Virus record (IMG/VR): IMGVR_UViG_3300018080_000098
Span: 62,001-126,000 of that record
Direction: 5' to 3' (one strand)
DNA: 64,000 nt
Part shown: positions 2,907 to 58,007 of the stretch, piece after piece
How the letters are laid out: each line of letters starts with the position of its first letter
Position numbering within the stretch: position 1 is the first letter of the stretch
Notes under the pieces: model-generated
What the model saw: the letters and a program-made list of their open reading frames with translations, nothing else
Database searches by the model: none
Told to the model about the DNA's origin: nothing
Made by a program: the position numbers and the translations under genes

Positions 2907-3764
2907 CTAGCCGAAAACGAGCATCCCAATATAGTCAACTGTGTTGACAGCAACCTTGATCATGTCTGGTGTACTTGGGAACGTAACCTCGTAAGTGTTT
3001 CTCATCCCTGGCACCGCGGTCGTTGTTAGAGAACCCCATACTCCAGATATGTACGCGTACACCAGTGGTGGGTTCTGATACTGGAAATAAATTTCCGAGC
3101 GTACCTCTTCCAACGGAACCATCACTACGCGCCAGGTAGCACCAGACCCCGATTTCACATCCAGCGCTCGAGTTTGGTACCACCCCTCGGAACCCACCCT
3201 CAGTTTGCTGATATTGTTCATCGGGAGCGCGTACGGCAGGGTATCGTATCGTTCGTTGTTGGGGACCATATCGTGCAAGCTGGGAGCTCGGAAGTCCTCC
3301 ATGTAGACAGTGGAGTTTCCGCCTGCCAACGTGTTGGCGATGTACATTAACGAATCATTTGCTGGAGCTTTCAGCAGGAAGTCTCGAACGGTTGTAGAGA
3401 TGATACGTTTGTCCCGTGTTTCTGCTAGACGGAGCCCATCCCACATCACTTCTGCGATGTGGCATCCATCCTTTAGTTTATCGTACGTGTCGTAGGGATT
3501 GTGGGAAGCCCACATCATGATAGCGGCACCGGGTCCTGCGTCGGTTGCTTCATCGATAACGATCTGGTCGAGGCTAGAGAACACTTGTGAACTGCTGTTA
3601 ACTGCTTGTGGTGTGATAGTATTTTTGGGTACCGGACCTGGGTCTACCCATGTTGAGTCGAACTCGAAGATGTGTTCAATTGAGTTTCCGTTTGCATCTT
3701 TGCCGTAGAGGTGGACCTTCACGACCATGGTGCCAGCACCGGAGGCATCTGCGAGGCCACACAT
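2907..3764 (-). CDS. Putative virion protein, C-terminal part (in frame with 3834..5114 across one TGA)
   Basis: Same frame as the upstream ORF; the 23 intervening codons are open; no Shine-Dalgarno before ATG 3764. Confidence 0.7.
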   Translation of the reverse strand: MCGLADASGAGTMVVKVHLYGKDANGNSIEHIFEFDSTWVDPGPVPKNTITPQAVNSSSQVFSSLDQIVIDEATDAGPGAAIMMWASHNPYDTYDKLKDGCHIAEVMWDGLRLAETRDKRIISTTVRDFLLKAPANDSLMYIANTLAGGNSTVYMEDFRAPSLHDMVPNNERYDTLPYALPMNNISKLRVGSEGWYQTRALDVKSGSGATWRVVMVPLEEVRSEIYFQYQNPPLVYAYISGVWGSLTTTAVPGMRNTYEVTFPSTPDMIKVAVNTVDYIGMLVFG

Positions 3765-3833
3765 GATACGAGCTGGTCCGTAGAGGTCGATGTCGAACGT
3801 GTCGGAAGTGGCTATAGGAGTGAGTAGTTTGTA

Positions 3834-5114
3834 TCAGTATATTACTTGGGGGGACTTGATTAAACTTCCGGTTCCGTCTACCAAGATCTCGTAGATCATG
3901 GGGAACTTCTGGGCATCCGCAAACGCTTCCTGAGTGTTGGTTAGCGCGGTAAACCCAGAGCCCCCCGCGATGATGAGCTCCTCTGCGCTGGGGTTCTTGG
4001 TAGAAAATAGAATTTCATTACTTCCTACTGGGGGCTCGCAGGCATCCACTTTAGTGTAGTACATATGGACCGCCCAATCGGTTGGAACGGTTTCCCATAT
4101 TACTACGCGGTTGGTGCCTACTACGATACTTCCAGCGTAGTCGGTTTCGGTGATTCCGTCTGTTACCCAGACTTTGCCTAATCGTACAGGATAGTTGGTA
4201 AGTTCGACGTATTGTGCGTTTGGGACAGATGTTTTTGACCCGGCGCCATCATCGGTTTTTATGGAAGCATAGGGGATTGCTACTTCACATCGGACACCGG
4301 GAATCTTGGCAATGGATCTATCGTCGGCCACAATCATCCCGTGATCTAGTTGTAGCTGCAGCGGCGAGAAGTCGCCAACGGTTAGATCGTTTTGTGATAG
4401 CGCGTGGGGGTTGGTTGCGGTGGATACGCCGGTTCCGATTTGTCCTCGATGCTCTACGTCTACAGCAGAGAACCAGGGACGGTTCCAGCTGTAGTTTCCT
4501 CGTGTGTGGTCAATCGACATCTGTGTGGTAACTGTAGATGTCAAAGGGTCTTCCACGTTTTGCATAGTGGCGATAGCAATCGGCACTAAGCTGTTGCGCA
4601 CATCCTCGTCGTAGTTTTGATACGCGTCGAGTGTATCGATATCTACTTGTACATCTGCTTCTGACGCACTGTTAGGGGAACCTGGTCTCCAGGTTACTGG
4701 AATAACCGGATCGAGGTAATCATTCAGCTGTGAATCTCCGGGGTCGAGAACGTACCGGAGGTAGACAACGTTTGTGATGCCGACTTCTGGGTCGTCCAGC
4801 TCGATTTGGCGTACTGTGTCGGGGATGAGGATCCACATCCCGTCTTTTGTGACCGCCATACCTGGGCTAATATCAACAGATTCTGTGTTGTTATTATTTA
4901 CTGAGACTGTGAGGGGAACGGTAGTTGTACCTGAAACAGCTGTTTCAGGGTTCTGTTCGCTTACGATTCCGTATGCGGGTGTGGTGAAGTAGTCGGGATG
5001 CCCTATCATGAGCAGCAGTCGCTGCACGAATTCTTCATTGTAGGTGTTGGCTTGATACTGCAGTCTGTCGAGCGACTGTCGAATCGTGTACGTGAGTCCT
5101 GGAATGTTTGCCAT
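3834..5114 (-). CDS. Putative virion/baseplate protein, N-terminal part (probably 735 aa, 2907..5114, with an internal TGA)
   Basis: VSVNNNNTESVDISPGMAVTKDG anchor-type motif and EHRGQIGTGVSTATNPH motif; ends at TGA 3836-3834. Confidence 0.75.
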   Translation of the reverse strand: MANIPGLTYTIRQSLDRLQYQANTYNEEFVQRLLLMIGHPDYFTTPAYGIVSEQNPETAVSGTTTVPLTVSVNNNNTESVDISPGMAVTKDGMWILIPDTVRQIELDDPEVGITNVVYLRYVLDPGDSQLNDYLDPVIPVTWRPGSPNSASEADVQVDIDTLDAYQNYDEDVRNSLVPIAIATMQNVEDPLTSTVTTQMSIDHTRGNYSWNRPWFSAVDVEHRGQIGTGVSTATNPHALSQNDLTVGDFSPLQLQLDHGMIVADDRSIAKIPGVRCEVAIPYASIKTDDGAGSKTSVPNAQYVELTNYPVRLGKVWVTDGITETDYAGSIVVGTNRVVIWETVPTDWAVHMYYTKVDACEPPVGSNEILFSTKNPSAEELIIAGGSGFTALTNTQEAFADAQKFPMIYEILVDGTGSLIKSPQVIY

Positions 5115-24807: not shown

Positions 24808-27116
24808 TATACAGTCTCCTCCACGGTCACATCTGTATCGTCTGAGCTCGAGCTGGTTGCTGCTGTATCGAGGATCCGCGCCGTAGTTGGGCTGCTACCA
24901 ATCGTGCCTGCGAAGCACCAGCTGTTGGGGTCTGGTGTCGTCGTGGTGTTGAACGCTCTTTTGTTGGGCAAGTCTTTGAACGCCCACTCCAGCGTGCATT
25001 TAGCGTAGTCGGCCACTGCTGCATTGAACGTCGTTTCGTTGTTGAACGCGGGCAGCGTGATCGTTCTTGATACGAATCCTCCTATAATGTAGTTGCTATC
25101 TCCTGTGTAGGTGGTGGTCACCCTGTTTGCCAGATTGGTGGCTGCTAGGGTACCATAGGCGTACGTGCCCACAGTGTCATTGTCGTGGCACTGGAGGTCT
25201 CTGGTCCACACTTCGGGTCCGCCGGTCCAGCCAGCTCCCTGCCAGGTTCCTCCGCCAGCAGGTGGGGCGGCAATAGTGGGGGCGGTGATAAGGCGCTGGT
25301 TGGCGGTTAGCGTGATTGTGTGGTTTTGCGTGCTCGTGCCATCGTTGCCGCCAGTGCGCAATCTGGTGGCGGGTTCTGTCATCTGGATTTGGGCGAAGTC
25401 GTGTGCGATGTAGACTACGACATTCTCGGTTGTAGTTGCATCGTTGGCTGCTCGGTTTGCGGAGATCTGGTAGTTCGGGCTGGTGATGTTGTAGCCACCA
25501 GCGCTGCGTGCGACTCCAGCTTTGTTTGCAGCGTATGTGTTGGGGCTGGGAATCGAGAGTTGTCCTAGTGGCGAAAAGTAAGTGATTGTGTCGAAGTTGA
25601 GGCAGATCGAGTGCACGGTGACTGTTTCGGCGTCTTTTATTGCCTCTTGTGTTGCCGGGTACGTAATATCCGACTGGTCCATCGCCCCTACTGTTGGGTA
25701 GAGGTTGTTGAGGAAGACGAGGTCCTTGCCGTCTACAGTTCCGCCGCCTGCGTTGGTATACACCCAATCCGACCAGGTTCCCGTGGAGCGTTGTACTCTC
25801 ACACGTGCTGGGAGTGCTTGGGTGGTGGTACCTCGGTCTGCGATATCGGAGGCGAAGGTATGGTTGGTTGTGGGTGCTACGCTGAAGCTCATTGCTTCGC
25901 AGGCGCCGCTGTTTTCCACTTCGACGTTGACAAACTGCAGGTCGGTTTGGATATTGATGTCGAAGGTGTCTGTAGCCTTGAGCTCGGTTTGCGTCCCAGG
26001 GTAGCCGCCCGTGAATTCGAGGGTGGTTATTTGTGGCTTTGCGTCTTCGGTCACGATGATGGTGTACGAGTTTCCATCTTGGTGTGTGGCTGTGATTGTG
26101 TACGGGAGTGTGAATCCTGTTAGGTCGGCTGTTCCGTGGTACGCTGTTGGGTCCTGGTTTGGAGAGGTACTCCAGACGACGGGTTCTCCATTCACGTCGA
26201 CGTCTGGACGGACTTGTACGTGTCCGGTGTAGGCGAAGACGTGAACCGTGATCACGGTCACGTCCGGGCTAGCAGCTGCGCTGGCTACGCGGGTTCCATT
26301 CTCCGTGAGGGTGACGTCGATGTTGCCGATGTTGGGCGTGAGGTTGGAGATGAAGATCACGCCGTCGTAGTCGGGCCCTCCCCCGCCGCCTAATGGGTAA
26401 TCGGTGGCACCGTCCCAAACGTGTACCAGGTTGTCACCAGAGTTCCAGTACATCAGACGGTCGAGCGGGTCGGTGCTGGGAGTAGTTGCTTGCTGCGGGT
26501 CGAAGTAGTAGGTGGGGCTCTTCGCAGAGGTGCCGAAGTAGCCATCTCGTGCGGTCCAGCTATCTCTACCGATGTAGACGTCTCGAGGTCTACGTAGTTG
26601 CACTCCGTCGTCTAGGGAGCCGATGTCGTAGACGGTGTCAGTGGTAAATTCTACGTGGCCACCGATGCGCAGTTGACCTTCTTGGTTGACTTCGAGGAAG
26701 TATGTGGAGCCGTCTCGAACGCGTAGGTAATCCACGGTGCCTTGAGTGGCCCAGATGTCTACGGGTCCGAGGTTGGGGTCGAGGTCGATGTAGGGGCCAT
26801 CGCGGTACGATTCCCGCAGCGGCATAAATACGGTATTGTGGTCGTGCGTGTGTGCAGTGACAGGTGTAGGGACCTGTTCCAGCGTTAGCAGAACAATGTA
26901 GAACTGGATGTCCCCTATGTACCCTTCTTGGAGTAGGCGGCTTCCCAGGAAGACTGTATTCTCAGGCAGGCCAGCGAGCGAAGTTATTCTCGCTTTTTCC
27001 TCATCCTGCAGAACGTACTGTTCTGGGTCTACGATAGGGTCGAGGGATTTCAGCGTAACGCGAACTGCGTAGACGCGTGTTGCTGACGTCACCTGGGTGG
27101 TGATTTCTACAGCCAT
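24807..27116 (-). CDS. Putative virion fibre/decoration protein with Ig-like beta-sandwich repeats (769 aa)
   Basis: Thr-rich beta-strand composition; YDIGS....RPRDVY fibre motif; N-terminus similar to 27138..27431. Confidence 0.7.
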   Translation of the reverse strand: MAVEITTQVTSATRVYAVRVTLKSLDPIVDPEQYVLQDEEKARITSLAGLPENTVFLGSRLLQEGYIGDIQFYIVLLTLEQVPTPVTAHTHDHNTVFMPLRESYRDGPYIDLDPNLGPVDIWATQGTVDYLRVRDGSTYFLEVNQEGQLRIGGHVEFTTDTVYDIGSLDDGVQLRRPRDVYIGRDSWTARDGYFGTSAKSPTYYFDPQQATTPSTDPLDRLMYWNSGDNLVHVWDGATDYPLGGGGGPDYDGVIFISNLTPNIGNIDVTLTENGTRVASAAASPDVTVITVHVFAYTGHVQVRPDVDVNGEPVVWSTSPNQDPTAYHGTADLTGFTLPYTITATHQDGNSYTIIVTEDAKPQITTLEFTGGYPGTQTELKATDTFDINIQTDLQFVNVEVENSGACEAMSFSVAPTTNHTFASDIADRGTTTQALPARVRVQRSTGTWSDWVYTNAGGGTVDGKDLVFLNNLYPTVGAMDQSDITYPATQEAIKDAETVTVHSICLNFDTITYFSPLGQLSIPSPNTYAANKAGVARSAGGYNITSPNYQISANRAANDATTTENVVVYIAHDFAQIQMTEPATRLRTGGNDGTSTQNHTITLTANQRLITAPTIAAPPAGGGTWQGAGWTGGPEVWTRDLQCHDNDTVGTYAYGTLAATNLANRVTTTYTGDSNYIIGGFVSRTITLPAFNNETTFNAAVADYAKCTLEWAFKDLPNKRAFNTTTTPDPNSWCFAGTIGSSPTTARILDTAATSSSSDDTDVTVEETV

Positions 27117-38576: not shown

Positions 38577-41369
38577 TCACGGATACTCGATGGTCACCTG
38601 GTAGAAGTGGACCGCTTTGTTGTGCCTGCACTGGCAAGGCATGTGCAAGATGGCGAACAGGAAGCTCGTACCAATTTCTGCTGGGATGGGTGACCAAATA
38701 ATTTCTGCGAACAGCCCGAGCTCGCCTATGGGCGCGGTTACTACTTCCTTTGGAACTCTACACCAATAGGTAACTTCCCACGGGTCCATTGGGTAGTTGG
38801 TGGTATCGTACGTAATTTGTGTTATGCGGCTTCGATATATCTCGTTGATCAATGCGGTGTCTGCAGTGTTCACCGGAACAACTGTAGTGGGGGCCGTGGG
38901 CACAAATCCGCCGGTTCCCACCGCGAATTCGGTGATCGCGTAGATGGTGCCGTCTACTGCCGATCGGGCGATGTACCCGGCTGGGAAGGGATCGTCCGCC
39001 AGGTCGGTAAGCTGCAGATCACTCGCTCCCGGAGTGCCCGATAGAATAGGTGCTGTTTGCAGCTGTACTCGAACCTGGGTAAGGAACGCCTCTCCCTCGA
39101 GGACCACCATCCCGTATTCGGCTCCATCAATTTCTGCGATGGTCCAGGGAGCTCCGCTGAAGGGAGAGGTGAAGTACTCTTCCCGGAGCTCGAACCAGCT
39201 CCCACCAGTGTTCCCGATGGAGAAGGTCTTCCCCACGTACGTTTCGCCGCCATAGCGAATGAGCGGCGCCACGACCGCAGTTGTGGTAGCTCCGCCCAGC
39301 CTCACGATGCAACGTACCTGCACAGCGTACGCTTGCTCTCCTGGAGGGAAAGCTCCTACTGGTGGGCCTACGGTGAACGTGCCGTACTGGGTGGTCCCTA
39401 CTGCAGTAGCGTCCGCTCCCAGGTAGCTCGTGTTGTAATCGGGAGGAGTTTCGTCCACGTTCTGCCAACGAGAGCCTGGAACTTGTGGGGGCACCTGTAC
39501 CGGGTAGTCTTGGTGGTAGCCATCAGCGGTGGGTAGCATATCGAAGGTGTTCAGGGGCGTGTGTTTCTGGAACACCTCGGCAGCTACCGTGGTGACGCGC
39601 AAGTCGCCGTCCAGGTTCTTCACCCCTACCTCGAGCAGGTCCACCTGCGCAGAGTTCCAAGACGTGTACCCCGGGGACCCAGATGGCCATCCAGTAGAAG
39701 GGTCGTTGATGAACTCCTCCTCAATCAGATGCCACTTGCCATCTGCTGGGATTTCCCAACCTTCATCACTGTGAGCTCCCAGATAGTTCGTTCCTGCTGA
39801 GCGACTTACCACAGCACAGCGCGCAACGTTCTCTCCCATGTTTTTGACCAGACAGCTGGCCTGCACCCGGTCGATATTGGGAGGGTAGGTAGGCGTCGTA
39901 AAATTTGAGAGCGTAAAAATGGATATGGGGAGCCAACCGTTCTCCTGGTACGCCAAGGATAACCCGTCGTCGCCCACCACAAAGATGTTGGTTGCCAGGC
40001 TTCCCCAGATACCGTAGAGGTGCTCCGTACGGAAGGAGGGCTTCTCCTGCCACAGCGCGCCATCCCAGCGAAGGGTCAAGCCGTTCTCCCCCACAACGAG
40101 CACGTCGGTGCTACTGCCACCCCACACACCTTGTAGGGATTCCACTGTACCGGATGCCATCGGTGCCCAGACTGCACCGTTCCAGTGTAGGATTGTTCCA
40201 GCGAACCCGACTGCGAAAACATCCGACGCGGCGGTACCCCACACACCGAACAGGTCTCGGATGGTTCCACTAACAAGAGGAGCCCAGACGGCTCCGTTGT
40301 AGTAGATGATTTCGCCCGTGTCACCCACGACGAAGATGTTGTTCGCATCAGCACCCCAGATGGCGTAGAGGTCTTGCGCAGACCCCGATGCCATAGGAAC
40401 CCAGGTAACACCATCCCAGTTGGTGACGAGCCCGTTTCTGCCCACTGCGAAGACGTTGTTGGTTGCGGTGCCCCAGACTCCTCGCAGCTGCTCGAGGGTG
40501 TTCGAGGTCAAATCTGTCCAGGAGGTACCATCGTAGTGGAGGATAGTGCCTAGGTTTCCTACGGCGAACATGTCGTTGTTCGCGGTGCCCCACACTCCGT
40601 ACAGGTCTTTTTCGGTACCCGAATCTTGCTCATCCCACGTCGAGCCATCCCAGTAGAGGATGGTTCCGCCATCGCCCACAGCGAACACATCGTTGCTGGC
40701 GAAGCCGTACACGTCCCGGAGTGTCTCGGTAACTTCGGTGTCCAGCACCTGCCAAGCGGTAGTAGAGTAGATGTAGCTGCCGTCTCCGTCGAATTTGCCG
40801 ACGGACATGTGGGCGCTGGCAGTACCTGGGTAGTTGTGCCACTCCTGGAAGGAAGGGTTGATGCCGTTGGCTGCCATGGTTTGGTGCGAATAGAGCTCGG
40901 TGTGGACCTGAATTTCGAGCTTCGTACAGCGAAGTTCTGATCCTTCTACATAGACAAGTCCTGCTTCAACACCGTTGAGGCTGGTGGAGTTCCAGGCGGT
41001 TCCGTTGGGGCCTTGAAAGTAGGTGGCTGGTATTTCGATGTAGGTGTTGGAGGAGATAGTGATCTCTTCGCTATCGTAGTCTACACCTAGTTGCCGGACA
41101 CGAAGCTTAAATTTTGTGGGAAGAGCGCCGTTGACACGCACTGTTGCAATGAGAGTTGCGCTGCCCACTCGAGTAGGTCGTACGTACGATCCGGAAGAAG
41201 TATCGCTAAAGCAGACCGTAAAAGCGCCAGGCTCAGTTGTGTAGACGTAAGCAGTATCTCCATCAGAGTCCGCTTCATTGAGATTAGCCCAGAATGGATT
41301 TGCATTGTTGCTCGTCCAGTAGGTTGCGTACCGTCCTACGTTGTCTGGTCTGAGGATTTGGAGCGCCAT
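38577..41369 (-). CDS. Tail/baseplate appendage protein: three repeated beta-domains, inserted 7-blade propeller, C-terminal tail-collar-like (DUF3751-like) domain
   Basis: Seven 39-aa LxGVWG....DVFAVG..GTIL.WDG..W repeats; C-terminal ITEFAVGTGG...DTALINEIYR...IGELGLFA. Confidence 0.82.
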   Translation of the reverse strand: MALQILRPDNVGRYATYWTSNNANPFWANLNEADSDGDTAYVYTTEPGAFTVCFSDTSSGSYVRPTRVGSATLIATVRVNGALPTKFKLRVRQLGVDYDSEEITISSNTYIEIPATYFQGPNGTAWNSTSLNGVEAGLVYVEGSELRCTKLEIQVHTELYSHQTMAANGINPSFQEWHNYPGTASAHMSVGKFDGDGSYIYSTTAWQVLDTEVTETLRDVYGFASNDVFAVGDGGTILYWDGSTWDEQDSGTEKDLYGVWGTANNDMFAVGNLGTILHYDGTSWTDLTSNTLEQLRGVWGTATNNVFAVGRNGLVTNWDGVTWVPMASGSAQDLYAIWGADANNIFVVGDTGEIIYYNGAVWAPLVSGTIRDLFGVWGTAASDVFAVGFAGTILHWNGAVWAPMASGTVESLQGVWGGSSTDVLVVGENGLTLRWDGALWQEKPSFRTEHLYGIWGSLATNIFVVGDDGLSLAYQENGWLPISIFTLSNFTTPTYPPNIDRVQASCLVKNMGENVARCAVVSRSAGTNYLGAHSDEGWEIPADGKWHLIEEEFINDPSTGWPSGSPGYTSWNSAQVDLLEVGVKNLDGDLRVTTVAAEVFQKHTPLNTFDMLPTADGYHQDYPVQVPPQVPGSRWQNVDETPPDYNTSYLGADATAVGTTQYGTFTVGPPVGAFPPGEQAYAVQVRCIVRLGGATTTAVVAPLIRYGGETYVGKTFSIGNTGGSWFELREEYFTSPFSGAPWTIAEIDGAEYGMVVLEGEAFLTQVRVQLQTAPILSGTPGASDLQLTDLADDPFPAGYIARSAVDGTIYAITEFAVGTGGFVPTAPTTVVPVNTADTALINEIYRSRITQITYDTTNYPMDPWEVTYWCRVPKEVVTAPIGELGLFAEIIWSPIPAEIGTSFLFAILHMPCQCRHNKAVHFYQVTIEYP

Positions 41370-52798: not shown

Positions 52799-54229
52799 TT
52801 ACTGTGCGGAGAAGATGGACCCTGGTGATAGCACTGGGTACTCTGTTCTTCCATCGAATTCGATGGGCGACACATCTTGGACACCTTCGTCTAGCCGGGC
52901 GAAAACGAGGACGGTAAACGTGCTCAATCCGGGCACAGCAGCTAGGACGGTGTCTTGGTAATCGCGTGGGTCGAGTGTGGCTCCAAATCGTTTTCTGGTA
53001 GCAGATGGAGAAATGGGGTCGTTGAAGTAGAACTCCGTGTATTCCTGAATAGCGACGTTTACAGCGTCCTGGTCTTCTGCAGACGTTGCTACAGCTCGAG
53101 CTTGTACAAAAACTGGGACAGCGTATCCTAGTCGTACGAGGACGTCGTTTCCGAAAGGTTTTCCCCTACCTTGCAGAGCGGTGTTCGCGTCCACAATACC
53201 CTCGTAGTTGAAATATTTGATTTCAACTGTTTGCCCAGGTTGTAGCGCGGTTGACAACGTAACTCGATCGTTGGCCCTTGGCGAATTACGAAACGCTTGT
53301 GCTGAGTCTGGCGTGAAGGTGAACGTAGCCCGTTCTCCATCAACCATGACATACTGAACTGACTGTACTGGGGGCTTATCGAGCGGGATAGACAGCTCTC
53401 CTCCTAACGCGGTGAACGTTTGGAGCTCATTCCCAAGGGTGTCTGTAATCACGTAGACGTCGTAGGCTGTGCGGCCATTAACGTAAGCTTGTCGTTCGAA
53501 GAGCTCGAACTCACTGGACGAAACGAGGGCTACATCGGTAGCTGCTACATCGTAGTCGAGGATGGTGGTTACCAGCCTACCAGTGAGGTCTGTATCCAGG
53601 GCCTGCAGGTTATTCCAGATGAGGTTTCTGAAGCTGGTTCTATCGAGTGGGTCGAATCCTCCGAGGGCCGCTTCGAAGTTGGTTACTCCATCGAAGTCGT
53701 TGACTCCGCTGATGATCGAGGTGATAGTTTCGGGTGGCAGGTTGAAGTCGTCGCCTATGGAAACGGCTTCGACTTCTCCGCGAACCTCGTACCGTCTTTC
53801 TGTTGGATTGTAGTAGATGTCCGGGTTATTTCCATCCATCACAATATCGTCAGTGGTGATGAATGTGTACCTTTGGTCTTCGGTACCGACGAGGGCGCCT
53901 TGTGGGATGACGTATACCTCTCCTGCTATTGGTCTGGATTCTCTGTAGAACGTTACTACAGCGTCTGCGAGCTCTCCGACATTGGGGTCTAGTGAGTAGT
54001 TATTCCCCAACGCTTCTATATCGTCATCGTCGATGTCTTCTGTGTTTTCTAGCTGGTACACCGTAGTTAGGTAAGCTGCTTGCGTTTCAGTAGCAGAGAG
54101 TTCAGTTGCTGTGGCGTAGATGAGCACACCGAGGGGGCCTTTGGCCACATCGATAGTGGGGTCGATATCCTCGAAGGTTTCTCCCATCGATTCGATAATT
54201 TCGTCTACATTTCTTGGAGCGGTAGCCAT
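52799..54229 (-). CDS. Baseplate J-like wedge protein
   Basis: A.AVVTFYR...VIPQGALV....TF.TT...VEAVSIGDDFNL...I.....GVTN..A.LGGFD, typical of baseplate J/gp47 proteins. Confidence 0.88.
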   Translation of the reverse strand: MATAPRNVDEIIESMGETFEDIDPTIDVAKGPLGVLIYATATELSATETQAAYLTTVYQLENTEDIDDDDIEALGNNYSLDPNVGELADAVVTFYRESRPIAGEVYVIPQGALVGTEDQRYTFITTDDIVMDGNNPDIYYNPTERRYEVRGEVEAVSIGDDFNLPPETITSIISGVNDFDGVTNFEAALGGFDPLDRTSFRNLIWNNLQALDTDLTGRLVTTILDYDVAATDVALVSSSEFELFERQAYVNGRTAYDVYVITDTLGNELQTFTALGGELSIPLDKPPVQSVQYVMVDGERATFTFTPDSAQAFRNSPRANDRVTLSTALQPGQTVEIKYFNYEGIVDANTALQGRGKPFGNDVLVRLGYAVPVFVQARAVATSAEDQDAVNVAIQEYTEFYFNDPISPSATRKRFGATLDPRDYQDTVLAAVPGLSTFTVLVFARLDEGVQDVSPIEFDGRTEYPVLSPGSIFSAQ

Positions 54230-55349: not shown

Positions 55350-58007
55350 TTAGATAAATTGTGTTATTGCATCTGTGAGCGCGCCAACTGATACAGGGGC
55401 GCAGCTTTCTTGGGTTGTTACCGTAGTACCGATTTTCAGAGACAGTTCGGACGCATCTTCACCTAGCAGCTCTTTGATGGCTTTGTCGAACTCGTTGAGC
55501 ACGTCTACTTTGGACTCTACACTTTTGGTGATATCCTCCATAACTTCCTTGATGCCTCTAGATATTTCTTGGGAGGTGGTGGTAGCAGTTTTGAGGACGT
55601 CTCCAGTGAAGTCTTCTATTTCTTCGCTTATTTCAGTTGTCTCTGGTTCTGTGGGGAACAAGCTTGCTTGAGGTAGTGTATCGTACACAGCGGAGAGCTC
55701 TTCCGATTCGTTGATGGTGTGTTGGACCTCGTCTGGTGAACACTCGTTGTTGGGGTCTGTTCCTTCTTTGCAGGGGTTAGTCTCACCTTCGAGGTCGATG
55801 CCGAGGATGTCGTCCATGATGGCAGTGATCATGCAGAGGGGTTTCTCGATGATACTAATCATTTTCTCGAAAGCTGTAGTAATAGTCTCGTCGAGGACAG
55901 CGCTGAGCTCTTTAAGGGCATCTCCCAGCAGGGACATGGGGATTGGGATACCACCGATGCTAACGGAGCCTCCTCCGAGGGATGGCGTACTGATGCTTCC
56001 TGTAGCGGCGGAAGCAGCACCCAGCAGGCATTGGGTGAGGTTGTTGTTGACGAGGTTGTCTGCAAGTGACAAGATATTTTGCAGGGTATTCAGAACGGGC
56101 TTTACGAGGCTCATCATGCCATCAATGAGTCGGTCAAACACTCCAGTAGCTGTGGTCACAACGGAAGACAGCGCGCCGAAAGCCGCCTCCACTTTCTTGG
56201 CCACGTCTGGCAGCTCTGGGGAAGGTAGGTTGGCGAGGGCTTCCTGGGCCGTGTTCAGGTTTGAGCTCAGGTAGTCTGGGACCTGGGATATTGTTCCGGT
56301 GGCCAGATTGAGTACGTCTGAGACGGGGGACTCGAGACTGGTTCTCATATTTTTGAGTTGGCGGGCGCAGCCCCTACCTCGAGTGGCCATTTCTTTTGCC
56401 AGGTCTTTGTCTTCTCCTGTTTTGGACAGGTCGATGGCTTGTGCGGCTGCTAAAGATTTCTTGACTTTGGAGCGCATGCCATTCGGGAGTATTTCCTTGT
56501 TGTCTCTGACAATGGATGCTATCTTGCTCTGCTTGTTAGATGGGTCGTTTGCGTCTGGTACGGCAATACCATCTATGTCTTTTTCTAGCAGCTCTACTAT
56601 TTCAGCATCCGTGAACTGGAACTTCGTGAAGAGCTCTGGGTCGTCGATTACTTTGACAACAGGTATTTGAGCGTAGCCCGCGAAGTCTCCCTCATCCAGC
56701 ACAGGGGTTTCTCCTGCGAGGATGTCAGTGAGCATCAGATCTGGGTAGCCCCACACGTACAACTTGTTGTAACTGGAGATGGTGGTTTGTGTTTCTCCAA
56801 GCTCCCCAATCCAGAAGATGTAGCCGTTGAGCTGCGAGATGTCTCCGTTGGTGTAGAGGTCTGCGGTGCTTTGCAGAGATTGGTTGTAGGCACGATACTG
56901 TTCTTGGATGACTGGGGTTGCTACGATTTCTCCACAGACTTCTTCGTATGTATTGACTTCCACGTTTTGCGTGATGAACAGGTGCGGAAGATTGGGGGTC
57001 TCGTTCATTTTTGTGAGAAAGTCTTTAGTCTGCTGGAGGTCGTTTCCTAACAGGGTGTAGAGTTGCCTGATGCCAACGAGGTTGGTTCCTTCTACCAGGA
57101 AAAGCTTTTTGTTAATGATGACGATTTCGTCGTCGGTTGACTCGAGGTAGGCAGCGGCTTCCTCTGCCGACTCCACTACAGGAATATCGATAGCAGTCAT
57201 CAGCTGCTGGTAGGTGTTGTAGCCGAACTGCTTGGCAATGGTGTTAGAAGTATCCTCGGCGTCTTTAACGGGGGTGCCAGCGCCTCCTTCGAGGAAGGTG
57301 TACTCTACGATGTCTGGAGTGTCGACACCACTTCCGACGAGAGTTCCGCTGACCAGATCGGTGACATCTGTGTTGGCGAGCCATTTAGTTAACGTTGCTC
57401 CCATGTTGTACCGAGTAGACACTGCACCATCTACGTCCACCCCTAGCGAGAGTACGATGGTTGTTCCGTTGACACTCGAGGATGGTTCTCTCAAACGGGC
57501 GGTGATGACCCCATTTAAGCCAGCTTCGGTAATGCCGTCGTAGGTGTTGACCAGTATCAGATGAGTGTTGCTGTAGATACGCCATACTGTGTACGCTCTG
57601 AGGACGTTGCTGGAGTCTGTGATTTGAAGTTGGTCTCCTGCGTTTATCTCTGTAGTGAATAGCGTACCGGCCCCGTAGACGTTGGTGTCCCCGTTGGTTA
57701 CGCTAAGCGTTCCAGTGATGGCATCATTCGCGTAGATAGGCCCTTCATAGATGTAGCCGATTTGGATATCGTTTCCATCCCGACCAGGTTCTTTTGCTTT
57801 CCAGAGAACCTTGTTGTTGGCAGTAGAACCGATGGTCACCTCGGCGTAGGATTTCGTAGTAGCATTTATTTTTGTTAGCTCCGTACTCAGATCAGCCAGT
57901 GTGGTTTCACCTTCTGCTTCGATGTCTCGAAGGGATTGGTTGACCTCTTTGAGGGCTTCCGCAATATCGTCTTCGATTGCACAGCCTAGGTAAATGGATG
58001 GAGACAT
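55350..58007 (-). CDS. Baseplate-associated protein (885 aa): sheath-like beta domain plus long acidic helical region
   Basis: WKAKEPGRDGNDIQI...FLEGG motif, an inserted GTLFTTEINAGD domain and an amphipathic helical C-terminal half. Confidence 0.7.
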   Translation of the reverse strand: MSPSIYLGCAIEDDIAEALKEVNQSLRDIEAEGETTLADLSTELTKINATTKSYAEVTIGSTANNKVLWKAKEPGRDGNDIQIGYIYEGPIYANDAITGTLSVTNGDTNVYGAGTLFTTEINAGDQLQITDSSNVLRAYTVWRIYSNTHLILVNTYDGITEAGLNGVITARLREPSSSVNGTTIVLSLGVDVDGAVSTRYNMGATLTKWLANTDVTDLVSGTLVGSGVDTPDIVEYTFLEGGAGTPVKDAEDTSNTIAKQFGYNTYQQLMTAIDIPVVESAEEAAAYLESTDDEIVIINKKLFLVEGTNLVGIRQLYTLLGNDLQQTKDFLTKMNETPNLPHLFITQNVEVNTYEEVCGEIVATPVIQEQYRAYNQSLQSTADLYTNGDISQLNGYIFWIGELGETQTTISSYNKLYVWGYPDLMLTDILAGETPVLDEGDFAGYAQIPVVKVIDDPELFTKFQFTDAEIVELLEKDIDGIAVPDANDPSNKQSKIASIVRDNKEILPNGMRSKVKKSLAAAQAIDLSKTGEDKDLAKEMATRGRGCARQLKNMRTSLESPVSDVLNLATGTISQVPDYLSSNLNTAQEALANLPSPELPDVAKKVEAAFGALSSVVTTATGVFDRLIDGMMSLVKPVLNTLQNILSLADNLVNNNLTQCLLGAASAATGSISTPSLGGGSVSIGGIPIPMSLLGDALKELSAVLDETITTAFEKMISIIEKPLCMITAIMDDILGIDLEGETNPCKEGTDPNNECSPDEVQHTINESEELSAVYDTLPQASLFPTEPETTEISEEIEDFTGDVLKTATTTSQEISRGIKEVMEDITKSVESKVDVLNEFDKAIKELLGEDASELSLKIGTTVTTQESCAPVSVGALTDAITQFI

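What the first reader, a model, noticed from the sequence alone, without database searches (positions are those of the whole stretch)
2907..5114. Single in-frame TGA splits one 735-codon virion gene: readthrough/recoding candidate
Seen: ORF 3834..5114 ends ...SPQVIY-TGA and the same frame continues open as YKLLTPIATSDTFDIDLYGPARI directly into ORF 2907..3764. That ORF has no SD before its ATG, and the 69-nt gap is longer than most gaps in this operon. TGA appears to be a true stop elsewhere (13241, 38577, 7688), so this is not genome-wide code 4/25. Options: programmed readthrough giving short and long forms of a structural protein, Sec insertion (I see no convincing SECIS hairpin directly 3'), a recent nonsense mutation from TGC/TGT/TGG, or a sequencing error.
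Basis: partly seen in the sequence, partly recalled or inferred. Interest (0 to 1): 0.65.

Follow-up and report, generated by a model that had tools for sequence, protein, structure and literature searches.

The report
Recent nonsense allele in phage tail gene
The in-frame TGA is real in this assembly, but it is a very recent one-base change (TGC to TGA) at an invariant cysteine of a single 735-residue tail/baseplate protein of an uncultured jumbo phage, so it is an ordinary nonsense variant, not programmed recoding.

Summary
On the minus strand, one TGA (window 3834-3836) splits a 735-codon frame into 426 and 308 codons. The window lies in a 349,793-bp jumbo-phage contig with terminal repeats, from a sediment metagenome.

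The recoding reading does not hold.
- A 55,546-bp contig from a sister metagenome matches this genome at every base except two. Those two lie 16 nt apart in this gene: TGC (Cys) instead of TGA, and ACT instead of CCT.
- All 35 full-length homologues, down to 41% identity, are single proteins of about 725-756 aa with an invariant Cys at this column.
- The 23 codons between the TGA and the next ATG include invariant residues, and that ATG has no Shine-Dalgarno sequence.
- TGA ends about 100 other genes. The genome is 91% coding under the standard code, and this is its only such junction.
- I found no SECIS-like hairpin, no tRNA-Sec, no SelB and no canonical UCA tRNA.
- Independent de Bruijn contigs of a public run stop exactly at the variable base, which suggests both alleles are present in the population.

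Best reading: a segregating nonsense allele that removes the two distal beta-sandwich domains of a receptor-binding-like baseplate protein. An assembly or sequencing artefact is the main rival. Interest is low.

The parts
2907..5114 (-). One ancestral gene of 735 codons for a multi-domain beta-rich virion (tail/baseplate, receptor-binding-like) protein, interrupted here by a single TGA
   Evidence: Translation. Continuous ORFs of 735-737 aa in L002-L005. 35 full-length homologues. Structure model and fold matches.
3837..5114 (-). Codons 1-426. This is the product expected from the TGA allele: an N-terminal helix, a shoulder-like domain (about residues 1-225), and a second beta domain (about 260-420)
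   Evidence: Residues 1-225 match the N-terminal parts of a Haloferax virus tail fibre, the lactococcal phage 1358 receptor-binding protein and TssK at Z 6-8.2.
3834..3836 (-). In-frame TGA at codon 427. The otherwise identical contig G001/L002 has TGC here, L003 has TGT, and L004 and L005 have TGC. Cys is invariant in the family
3816..3818 (-). Codon 433, CCT (Pro) here and ACT (Thr) in G001. This is the only other difference in 55,546 shared bases, 16 nt downstream of the TGA
3765..3833 (-). The 69-nt 'gap', which is really codons 428-450 of the ancestral protein. It is conserved coding sequence that includes the invariant Y445 and G446
2907..3764 (-). Downstream ORF (codons 451-735 plus the TAG stop). 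It carries most of two jelly-roll/CBM-like beta-sandwich domains (about 418-550 and 591-735). Its ATG is an internal Met with no Shine-Dalgarno sequence
3790..3834 (.). Stretch not covered by any Logan contig of run SRR6963352 (X1). One contig ends at 3789 and the next begins at 3835, right next to the variable base

Best explanation
The TGA is a very recent point mutation (TGC to TGA, Cys427 to stop) that is segregating in a nearly clonal natural population of an uncultured jumbo phage distantly related to phiKZ. It is linked to a second change 16 nt downstream (Thr433 to Pro). The gene is a single 735-residue virion protein. It has an N-terminal domain resembling receptor-binding-protein shoulder and TssK domains, followed by beta-sandwich domains, and it sits in a tail/baseplate/fibre gene block. 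Ribosomes are expected to terminate at the UGA and release a 426-residue protein that keeps the presumed anchoring part and lacks the two distal jelly-roll domains. Full-length protein could arise only from the low, unprogrammed leakiness typical of UGA. Shown here: the stop, its uniqueness in the genome, the Cys-coding allele in an otherwise identical contig, continuity and an invariant Cys in all homologues, and the absence of recoding signals. Inferred: that the allele is real rather than an artefact, that it is tolerated because this protein or its distal part is dispensable or is complemented by co-infecting wild-type genomes, and the protein's role.
For: G001 (IMGVR_UViG_3300017991_000132, 55,546 bp) matches genome positions 12916-68461 at every base except window 3818 and 3834, and it has TGC at the site. 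L003-L005 and 31 further proteins are continuous at 724-756 aa, and C427 is invariant across 35 sequences. The 23 codons after the TGA contain the invariant Y445 and G446, and there is no Shine-Dalgarno sequence before ATG 3764. The genome is 91% coding under code 11, 103 genes end in TGA, and there is only one such junction. The fold downstream of the UGA is weak (-7.5 kcal/mol, z about -1) and is the same in both alleles. There is no Rfam match. No tRNA-Sec reaches threshold and no SelB is found. ARAGORN finds no canonical UCA anticodon among 18 tRNAs. Logan contigs of SRR6963352 end at ...ATATACTG, one base before the variable position, and at 3789. That is what a de Bruijn graph does at a branch, so at least two variants are probably present in that run. 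The tail/baseplate context comes, and the fold evidence.
Against: No raw reads could be seen, so allele counts, phasing and strand balance at 3834 and 3818 are unknown. The TGA allele appears in only one assembly, JGI 3300018080. Two differences 16 nt apart in 55.5 kb are not what independent random mutations give (roughly 6 in 10,000 by my estimate), so either a single mutational event, selection, or a local artefact is involved. A nonsense allele at an invariant residue that an assembler picked as the main path is unexpected if the protein is essential. One aberrant tRNA-like gene could conceivably present a UCA anticodon.
Confidence: 0.7

Rival explanations
1. It is an assembly or sequencing artefact. 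The phage genome really has TGC (and ACT) here, and the assembler followed a path built from erroneous or minority k-mers.
For: The TGA allele is found in only one assembly. Depth in the one run available is only about 10x. The two differences sit close together, about 20 nt downstream of a C6 run on the coding strand, which is the kind of place where local systematic errors occur (my own knowledge). The changes are a G-to-T and a T-to-G on the plus strand, and both types are also known as artefact classes (my own knowledge).
Against: Assemblers follow the best-supported path. Two linked errors would have to dominate at about 10x depth. The rest of the 55.5 kb agrees perfectly between the two assemblies. 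The Logan graph of an independent assembly branches exactly at 3834, which needs repeated k-mers for more than one variant.
Confidence: 0.13
2. The UGA is decoded at a useful rate, so both a 426-aa and a 735-aa form are made. Decoding could be by near-cognate tRNA-Trp or tRNA-Cys, or by a phage-encoded suppressor.
For: The downstream frame is intact. UGA is the leakiest stop codon in bacteria (my own knowledge). The genome encodes tRNA-Cys(GCA), and it has an aberrant tRNA-like gene at genome c219640-219718 with a 6-nt loop UUUCAU that ARAGORN labels 'Glu|SeC'.
Against: The stop is not conserved in any relative, including a genome identical elsewhere. The intact downstream frame is explained simply by how recent the mutation is. 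The base after the stop is U, which I recall as the most efficient UGA termination context in E. coli. No stimulatory structure is present. An efficient opal suppressor would conflict with about 100 genes that end in TGA. The tRNA-like gene has no canonical 7-nt anticodon loop, and its minimum-energy fold gives a branched 26-nt arm.
Confidence: 0.06
3. The clustered changes are escape mutations from a sequence-specific host defence, for example a CRISPR protospacer covering about 3790-3836. The nonsense change is tolerated because the protein's distal part is dispensable. This concerns the cause of the mutation and is compatible with the best explanation.
For: The only two differences in 55.5 kb lie 16 nt apart. 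The Logan graph also breaks at 3790, which hints at a third variable site within 45 nt. The changes hit conserved residues (C427, and perhaps I442), which argues against diversifying selection on the protein itself.
Against: No matching spacer was found in 185,579 species-representative genomes with two patterns. The host is unknown. A span of 45 nt is longer than one typical protospacer plus PAM. A single multi-nucleotide mutation event explains two nearby changes equally well.
Confidence: 0.08
4. The UGA encodes selenocysteine in place of the invariant cysteine.
For: A UGA aligned with an invariant Cys in homologues is the classic signature of a Sec/Cys pair.
Against: There is no hairpin in the 23 nt after the UGA. 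The only fold further downstream is weak, has its apical loop about 40 nt away, and is identical in the Cys allele. No tRNA-Sec reaches the Rfam threshold (best 31.5 bits against 47), and there is no SelB in the phage. The sister genome has TGC with the same flanks.
Confidence: 0.01
5. These are two real genes, with the downstream part starting independently at ATG 3764.
For: An ATG exists 23 codons after the stop, and automated annotation called a 285-aa gene there.
Against: There is no Shine-Dalgarno sequence. No homologue is split. The skipped 23 codons contain invariant residues. In the model both break points fall inside beta-strands (423-430 and 448-455).
Confidence: 0.02

Closest known systems
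Spontaneous nonsense (opal) mutants of phage structural genes, the classical conditional-lethal type
   Same: A single base change turns a sense codon (TGC) into TGA inside a virion gene. The downstream frame is still intact and the wild-type allele coexists.
   Different: It was seen in an environmental population rather than selected in the laboratory. It is linked to a second change 16 nt away. Whether it is lethal, complemented or tolerated is unknown.
Programmed UGA readthrough in Q-beta (coat protein extended to the A1 read-through protein)
   Same: A UGA sits between an upstream structural ORF and an in-frame extension.
   Different: In Q-beta the stop is a fixed, conserved feature and the extension is an add-on (my own knowledge). 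Here the stop is missing from all relatives and interrupts a conserved domain at an invariant residue.
Bacterial selenoprotein genes (UGA plus a SECIS hairpin, as in fdhF)
   Same: The UGA aligns with Cys in homologues.
   Different: There is no SECIS-like hairpin, no tRNA-Sec and no SelB in the phage, and the stop is not conserved.
Stop-codon reassignment in phages with suppressor tRNAs (bioRxiv 10.1101/2021.08.26.457843; PMC9523058)
   Same: It is a large phage with its own tRNAs, and the in-frame stop lies in a late (structural) gene.
   Different: Recoded phages carry many in-frame stops across many genes and avoid that codon as a terminator. This genome has one in-frame TGA, is 91% coding under code 11, and ends 103 genes in TGA. 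It has no canonical suppressor tRNA.
Baseplate-attached receptor-binding proteins with a shoulder domain (lactococcal phage 1358 RBP, TssK of type VI secretion, Haloferax tailed virus 1 tail fibre)
   Same: The N-terminal 225 residues superpose at Z 6-8.2. The C-terminal jelly-roll/CBM-like domains resemble the distal domains of phage fibres. The gene lies in a tail/baseplate block.
   Different: There is no sequence similarity to any solved chain, Pfam or PHROG family. The Z scores are in the range where a common arrangement cannot be excluded. Oligomeric state and location in the virion are untested.

Membership tests
Programmed stop-codon readthrough (Q-beta A1 type) | The stop codon is conserved at the same position in relatives | tested here: not met
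   35 homologues have Cys, and an otherwise identical contig has TGC.
Programmed stop-codon readthrough (Q-beta A1 type) | A leaky context or stimulatory RNA structure 3' of the stop | tested here: not met
   The context is UGA-U. The downstream fold is -7.5 kcal/mol with z about -1, the same in both alleles. There is no Rfam match.
Programmed stop-codon readthrough (Q-beta A1 type) | Both short and long protein forms are present in virions | not testable with these tools
   This needs proteomics on a cultured phage or on the sample.
Bacterial selenoprotein gene | UGA aligned with Cys (or Sec) in homologues | tested here: met
   C427 is invariant.
Bacterial selenoprotein gene | A SECIS stem-loop immediately downstream of the UGA | tested here: not met
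   The first 23 nt after the UGA are unpaired. Beyond that there is only a weak, interrupted hairpin, which the TGC allele shares.
Bacterial selenoprotein gene | tRNA-Sec and SelB are available | tested here: inconclusive
   Neither is in the phage genome. The host is unknown and could supply them.
Genome-wide TGA reassignment (codes 4 and 25, or phage recoding) | Many genes carry in-frame TGA, and TGA is avoided as a terminator | tested here: not met
   There is one junction only, 103 of 435 genes end in TGA, and coding density is 91% under code 11.
Genome-wide TGA reassignment (codes 4 and 25, or phage recoding) | A suppressor tRNA with a UCA anticodon | tested here: inconclusive
   No canonical one is present. 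One aberrant tRNA-like gene with a 6-nt loop UUUCAU is ambiguous.
Two independent genes | Homologues are split, the second gene has its own ribosome-binding site and start, and the gap is not conserved | tested here: not met
Diversity-generating retroelement target | A template repeat near-identical to the variable stretch elsewhere in the genome | tested here: not met
   A short-word blastn of window 3701-3950 against the whole genome finds only chance matches of 17 nt or less.
Baseplate-attached receptor-binding protein (shoulder/TssK-like N-terminus) | N-terminal shoulder fold | tested here: inconclusive
   Z is 8.2 (129 residues aligned), 7.3 and 6.5-6.6 to 9h5b, 4rgg, 6n38 and 5y0e over model residues 1-225. 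The tool's own notes rate Z values in this range as middling.
Baseplate-attached receptor-binding protein (shoulder/TssK-like N-terminus) | Encoded among tail and baseplate genes | tested here: met
   The same strand carries a Baseplate_J-like gene at 52802-54229, tail-fibre-like genes at 55353-58007 and 38580-41369, and a gene similar to PhiPA3 gene 165 (noted there as phiKZ gp145-like) at 24810-27116.

The most novel reading that the evidence does not exclude
The UGA is not a dead end. It is decoded at a useful rate in some hosts or conditions, for example by the phage's own aberrant tRNA-like gene that may present UCA, or by Cys/Sec insertion. The two distal binding domains of this tail protein would then be attached conditionally. 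The TGA and TGC alleles would coexist as a population-level switch of adsorption properties.
Probability: 0.04. Interest if true: 0.7.

Novelty: already known. Interest (0 to 1): 0.15.

Why it matters
It matters mainly as a caution. A UGA aligned with an invariant Cys, with an open downstream frame, looks like recoding or selenocysteine. Here a sister contig identical at all but two bases shows it is a fresh nonsense allele. For annotation, the two called genes (426 and 285 aa) should be treated as one interrupted gene. If the allele is real and common in its sample, it would be a small natural example of a jumbo phage tolerating loss of the distal domains of one of its many fibre-like proteins. 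That is of modest interest for questions of host range.

Tried and rejected
- **Searches of isolate phages:** megablast and tblastn of both halves and of both neighbouring genes against INPHARED phages found nothing.
- **Family and structure-by-sequence searches:** Pfam and PHROGs found no family for either half. A profile of the family against PDB sequences found nothing. The ESM Atlas look-alike search gave only scores of about 0.8 and TM values below 0.5, which are leads only.
- **Reads:** Read laying returned only Logan contigs, not raw reads. No contig covers 3790-3834, so allele frequencies could not be measured.
- **Pattern scans:** scans of IMG/VR and JGI metagenome contigs with N at both variable bases found only the sister contig (IMG/VR) and the window's own contig (JGI).
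- **CRISPR spacers:** two patterns searched in GTDB representative genomes gave no match.
- **DGR:** there is no template repeat in the genome.
- **Hot spot in a related lineage:** L004 and L005 differ at one base, and it lies in another gene.
- **Selenocysteine:** no SECIS, no tRNA-Sec, no SelB.
- **Recoding RNA elements:** nothing in Rfam.
- **A second Logan contig ending at 3817:** not on record.
- **Limits and rules:** no other genetic code was used for any translation.
Full report
**Observation**

On the minus strand, ORF 3834..5114 (426 codons) ends in TGA at 3834-3836. The same frame stays open for 23 codons and runs into ORF 2907..3764 (285 codons, TAG stop). That makes 735 codons with one internal stop. 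The ATG at 3764 has no Shine-Dalgarno-like motif, whereas many neighbouring genes have AGGA or GGAG upstream.

**Setting**

The window is positions 62001-126000 of a 349,793-bp virus record with direct terminal repeats. The record is JGI contig Ga0180433_10000009 of IMG metagenome 3300018080, and the matching public runs are labelled as sediment metagenomes.

Every sizeable gene in the window is on the minus strand. Recognisable genes are tail and baseplate genes:
- a Baseplate_J-like protein at 52802-54229;
- tail-fibre-like N-termini at 55353-58007 and 38580-41369;
- a 769-aa protein at 24810-27116 that is 36-42% identical to PhiPA3 gene 165, which that record notes as phiKZ gp145-like, and to its counterparts in other phiKZ-related Pseudomonas phages.

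So this is an uncultured jumbo myovirus distantly related to phiKZ-like phages. Neither half of the interrupted gene, nor its two neighbours, matches anything in Pfam, PHROGs or isolate phage genomes.

**One gene or two**

Four IMG/VR loci encode relatives, and all four have one continuous ORF of 735-737 codons. The word search found 36 proteins. Nearly all are 720-756 aa and continuous. The exceptions are one 665-aa hit covering 91% of the query and the window's own 426-aa piece.

In an alignment of 35 full-length sequences, down to 41% identity, Cys427 is invariant. The 23 codons between the TGA and the ATG contain the invariant Y445 and G446 and several nearly invariant residues. In the structure model both break points fall inside beta-strands (423-430 and 448-455). 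The two ORFs are therefore one gene, and the idea of an independent downstream start is rejected.

**How old is the stop**

Contig IMGVR_UViG_3300017991_000132 (55,546 bp, handle G001) comes from a different IMG metagenome. It matches genome positions 12916-68461 at every base except two:
- window 3834, where G001 has TGC and the window has TGA;
- window 3818, where G001 has ACT (Thr433) and the window has CCT (Pro).

The more distant relatives use TGT or TGC, so TGC is ancestral and TGA is a very recent derived state. The intact downstream frame therefore says nothing about readthrough, because it has simply had no time to decay.

Two differences 16 nt apart in 55.5 kb are unlikely to be independent events. 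My rough estimate is about 2 x 16 / 55,546, or 6 in 10,000. A single multi-nucleotide mutation, local selection, or a local artefact must be involved.

**Reads**

Only Logan contigs, not raw reads, were available. In run X1 (SRR6963352) a 26,141-nt contig ends with ...ATATACTG, one base before the variable position. A 13,456-nt contig ends at window 3789. Nothing covers 3790-3834.

Ending exactly before a variable base is what a de Bruijn graph does at a branch. I therefore infer that more than one variant at 3834, and perhaps at 3790, is present in that run. This is not proof, and the tool itself warns that a hole proves nothing. A third contig on record carries the same 426-aa product, but the tool did not show it, so what it contains at the TGA site is unknown. 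The 285-aa downstream call occurs only on the window's own contig, so the TGA allele is directly attested in one assembly only.

**Tests of recoding**

*Genetic code.* A crude longest-ORF gene call gives 435 genes and 91% coding density under the standard code. Stop usage is TAG 185, TAA 147 and TGA 103. This locus is the only same-frame gene pair separated by a TGA with an open gap of 30 nt or more. No other code was applied at any point.

*Suppressor tRNA.* ARAGORN finds 18 tRNA genes and none has a canonical UCA anticodon. One aberrant tRNA-like gene (genome c219640-219718) scores 43.7 bits with the Rfam tRNA model. It has a 6-nt loop UUUCAU in ARAGORN's fold, which ARAGORN labels 'Glu|SeC', and a branched 26-nt arm in the minimum-energy fold. 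It cannot be accepted as an opal suppressor, and it cannot be fully dismissed. An efficient suppressor would in any case conflict with about 100 TGA terminators.

*Selenocysteine.* The Sec/Cys alignment signature is met. However, the 23 nt after the UGA are unpaired. The only downstream fold is weak (-7.5 kcal/mol, z about -1), and it is the same in the TGC allele. No tRNA-Sec reaches threshold (best 31.5 bits against a cut-off of 47, all at ordinary tRNA genes) and there is no SelB.

*Readthrough signals.* The site is UGA-U. From my recollection of the E. coli literature this is the strongest UGA termination context. There is no Rfam element.

*Targeted hypervariation by a DGR.* The genome contains no template repeat.

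**What the protein is**

AlphaFold2 on the 35-sequence alignment gave mean pLDDT 81 and pTM 0.62.
- Residues 1-225 superpose on the N-terminal parts of the Haloferax tailed virus 1 tail fibre (Z 8.2), the lactococcal phage 1358 receptor-binding protein (Z 7.0-7.3) and TssK (Z 6.0-6.6).
- Residues 418-550 and 591-735 are jelly-roll/CBM-like beta-sandwiches. They resemble domains in phage tails, a Bdellovibrio fibre and carbohydrate-binding modules (Z 5-6.7).
- The best Foldseek PDB match is a chain of the phage phi812 baseplate (E 9e-10, probability 0.99).

These scores are middling, so the assignment as a baseplate-attached, receptor-binding-like protein is an inference, supported by the gene's neighbourhood. 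Under that reading, the TGA at codon 427 falls at the start of the third domain. The 426-aa product would keep the presumed anchoring part and lose both distal domains.

**Explanation and rivals**

*Most likely (0.7).* A real, recent nonsense allele is segregating with the wild-type allele. Translation terminates at the UGA. The allele persists because this fibre-like protein or its distal part is dispensable in a phage with many such proteins, or because wild-type genomes complement it during co-infection.

*Main rival (0.13).* An assembly or sequencing artefact. It is favoured by the single attestation, by about 10x depth, and by the clustering of the two changes near a C6 run. It is disfavoured by the perfect agreement over the other 55.5 kb and by the graph branch in an independent assembly.

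*Minor rivals.*
- Functional readthrough or suppression: 0.06.
- A split gene with its own downstream start: 0.02.
- Selenocysteine: 0.01.

*A non-exclusive idea about cause (0.08).* The clustered changes could be escape from a sequence-specific host defence. This stays untested. Two spacer-type patterns found nothing in 185,579 representative genomes. A related lineage shows no hot spot here.

**Comparison, novelty and verdict**

This behaves like an ordinary opal mutant of a phage structural gene. It fails the defining tests for programmed readthrough, for a selenoprotein gene, for stop-codon reassignment (as described in bioRxiv 10.1101/2021.08.26.457843 and PMC9523058) and for a split gene.

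The finding is real as sequence, but it is not a recoding site, and interest is low. The two annotated genes should be merged as one interrupted gene. The decisive step is to look at the raw reads at 3790-3834.

Noticed in passing
outside the window: genome (G000:C1) 214001-221000 = L018, minus strand (L018 1605-1679, 3718-3858, 4864-4938, 4941-5011, 5018-5093, 5640-5718): A cluster of tRNA-like genes with non-canonical anticodon arms. They score 31-51 bits with the Rfam tRNA model but have loops of 6 nt (UUUCAU, labelled 'Glu|SeC'), 8 nt (UUUAAGGA) and 12 nt, and one has an insert of about 70 nt. Only the tRNA-Leu(AAG) at 4864-4938 folds canonically. They may be decoys, tRNAs with altered anticodon loops, or decayed copies. 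Their function is unknown.
   Followed up: partly
whole genome; in the window, the stops of the 31 listed genes: TAG is the most used stop codon (185 TAG, 147 TAA, 103 TGA in a crude gene call). In the window's structural block only 2 of the 30 genes other than the interrupted one end in TGA. Stops are often embedded in the next gene's Shine-Dalgarno-like motif (for example TAAGGA or TAGGAG).
   Followed up: partly
outside the window: genome plus strand around 40970 (TAG) and 43112 (TGA): Three long open stretches (321, 713 and 211 codons) lie in one frame, separated by single stops. The last has no in-frame ATG for 164 codons. This could be adjacent genes, a shadow frame, or another interrupted gene. 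The stretch is identical in the sister contig G001.
   Followed up: no
window 24810-27116 (-): This gene matches PHROG 15433, labelled 'tail sheath', and PhiPA3 gene 165, also annotated as tail sheath. The PhiPA3 record says that gene is similar to phiKZ gp145. From my own knowledge the phiKZ sheath is gp29, so the 'sheath' label may be a propagated misannotation of a tail or fibre-associated protein.
   Followed up: no
window 3789/3790: The left Logan contig of SRR6963352 ends at 3789, not at 3817 as expected if the known variable site at 3818 were the only branch on that side. This hints at a third polymorphic site at 3790, the second base of the Ile442 codon, in that run.
   Followed up: partly
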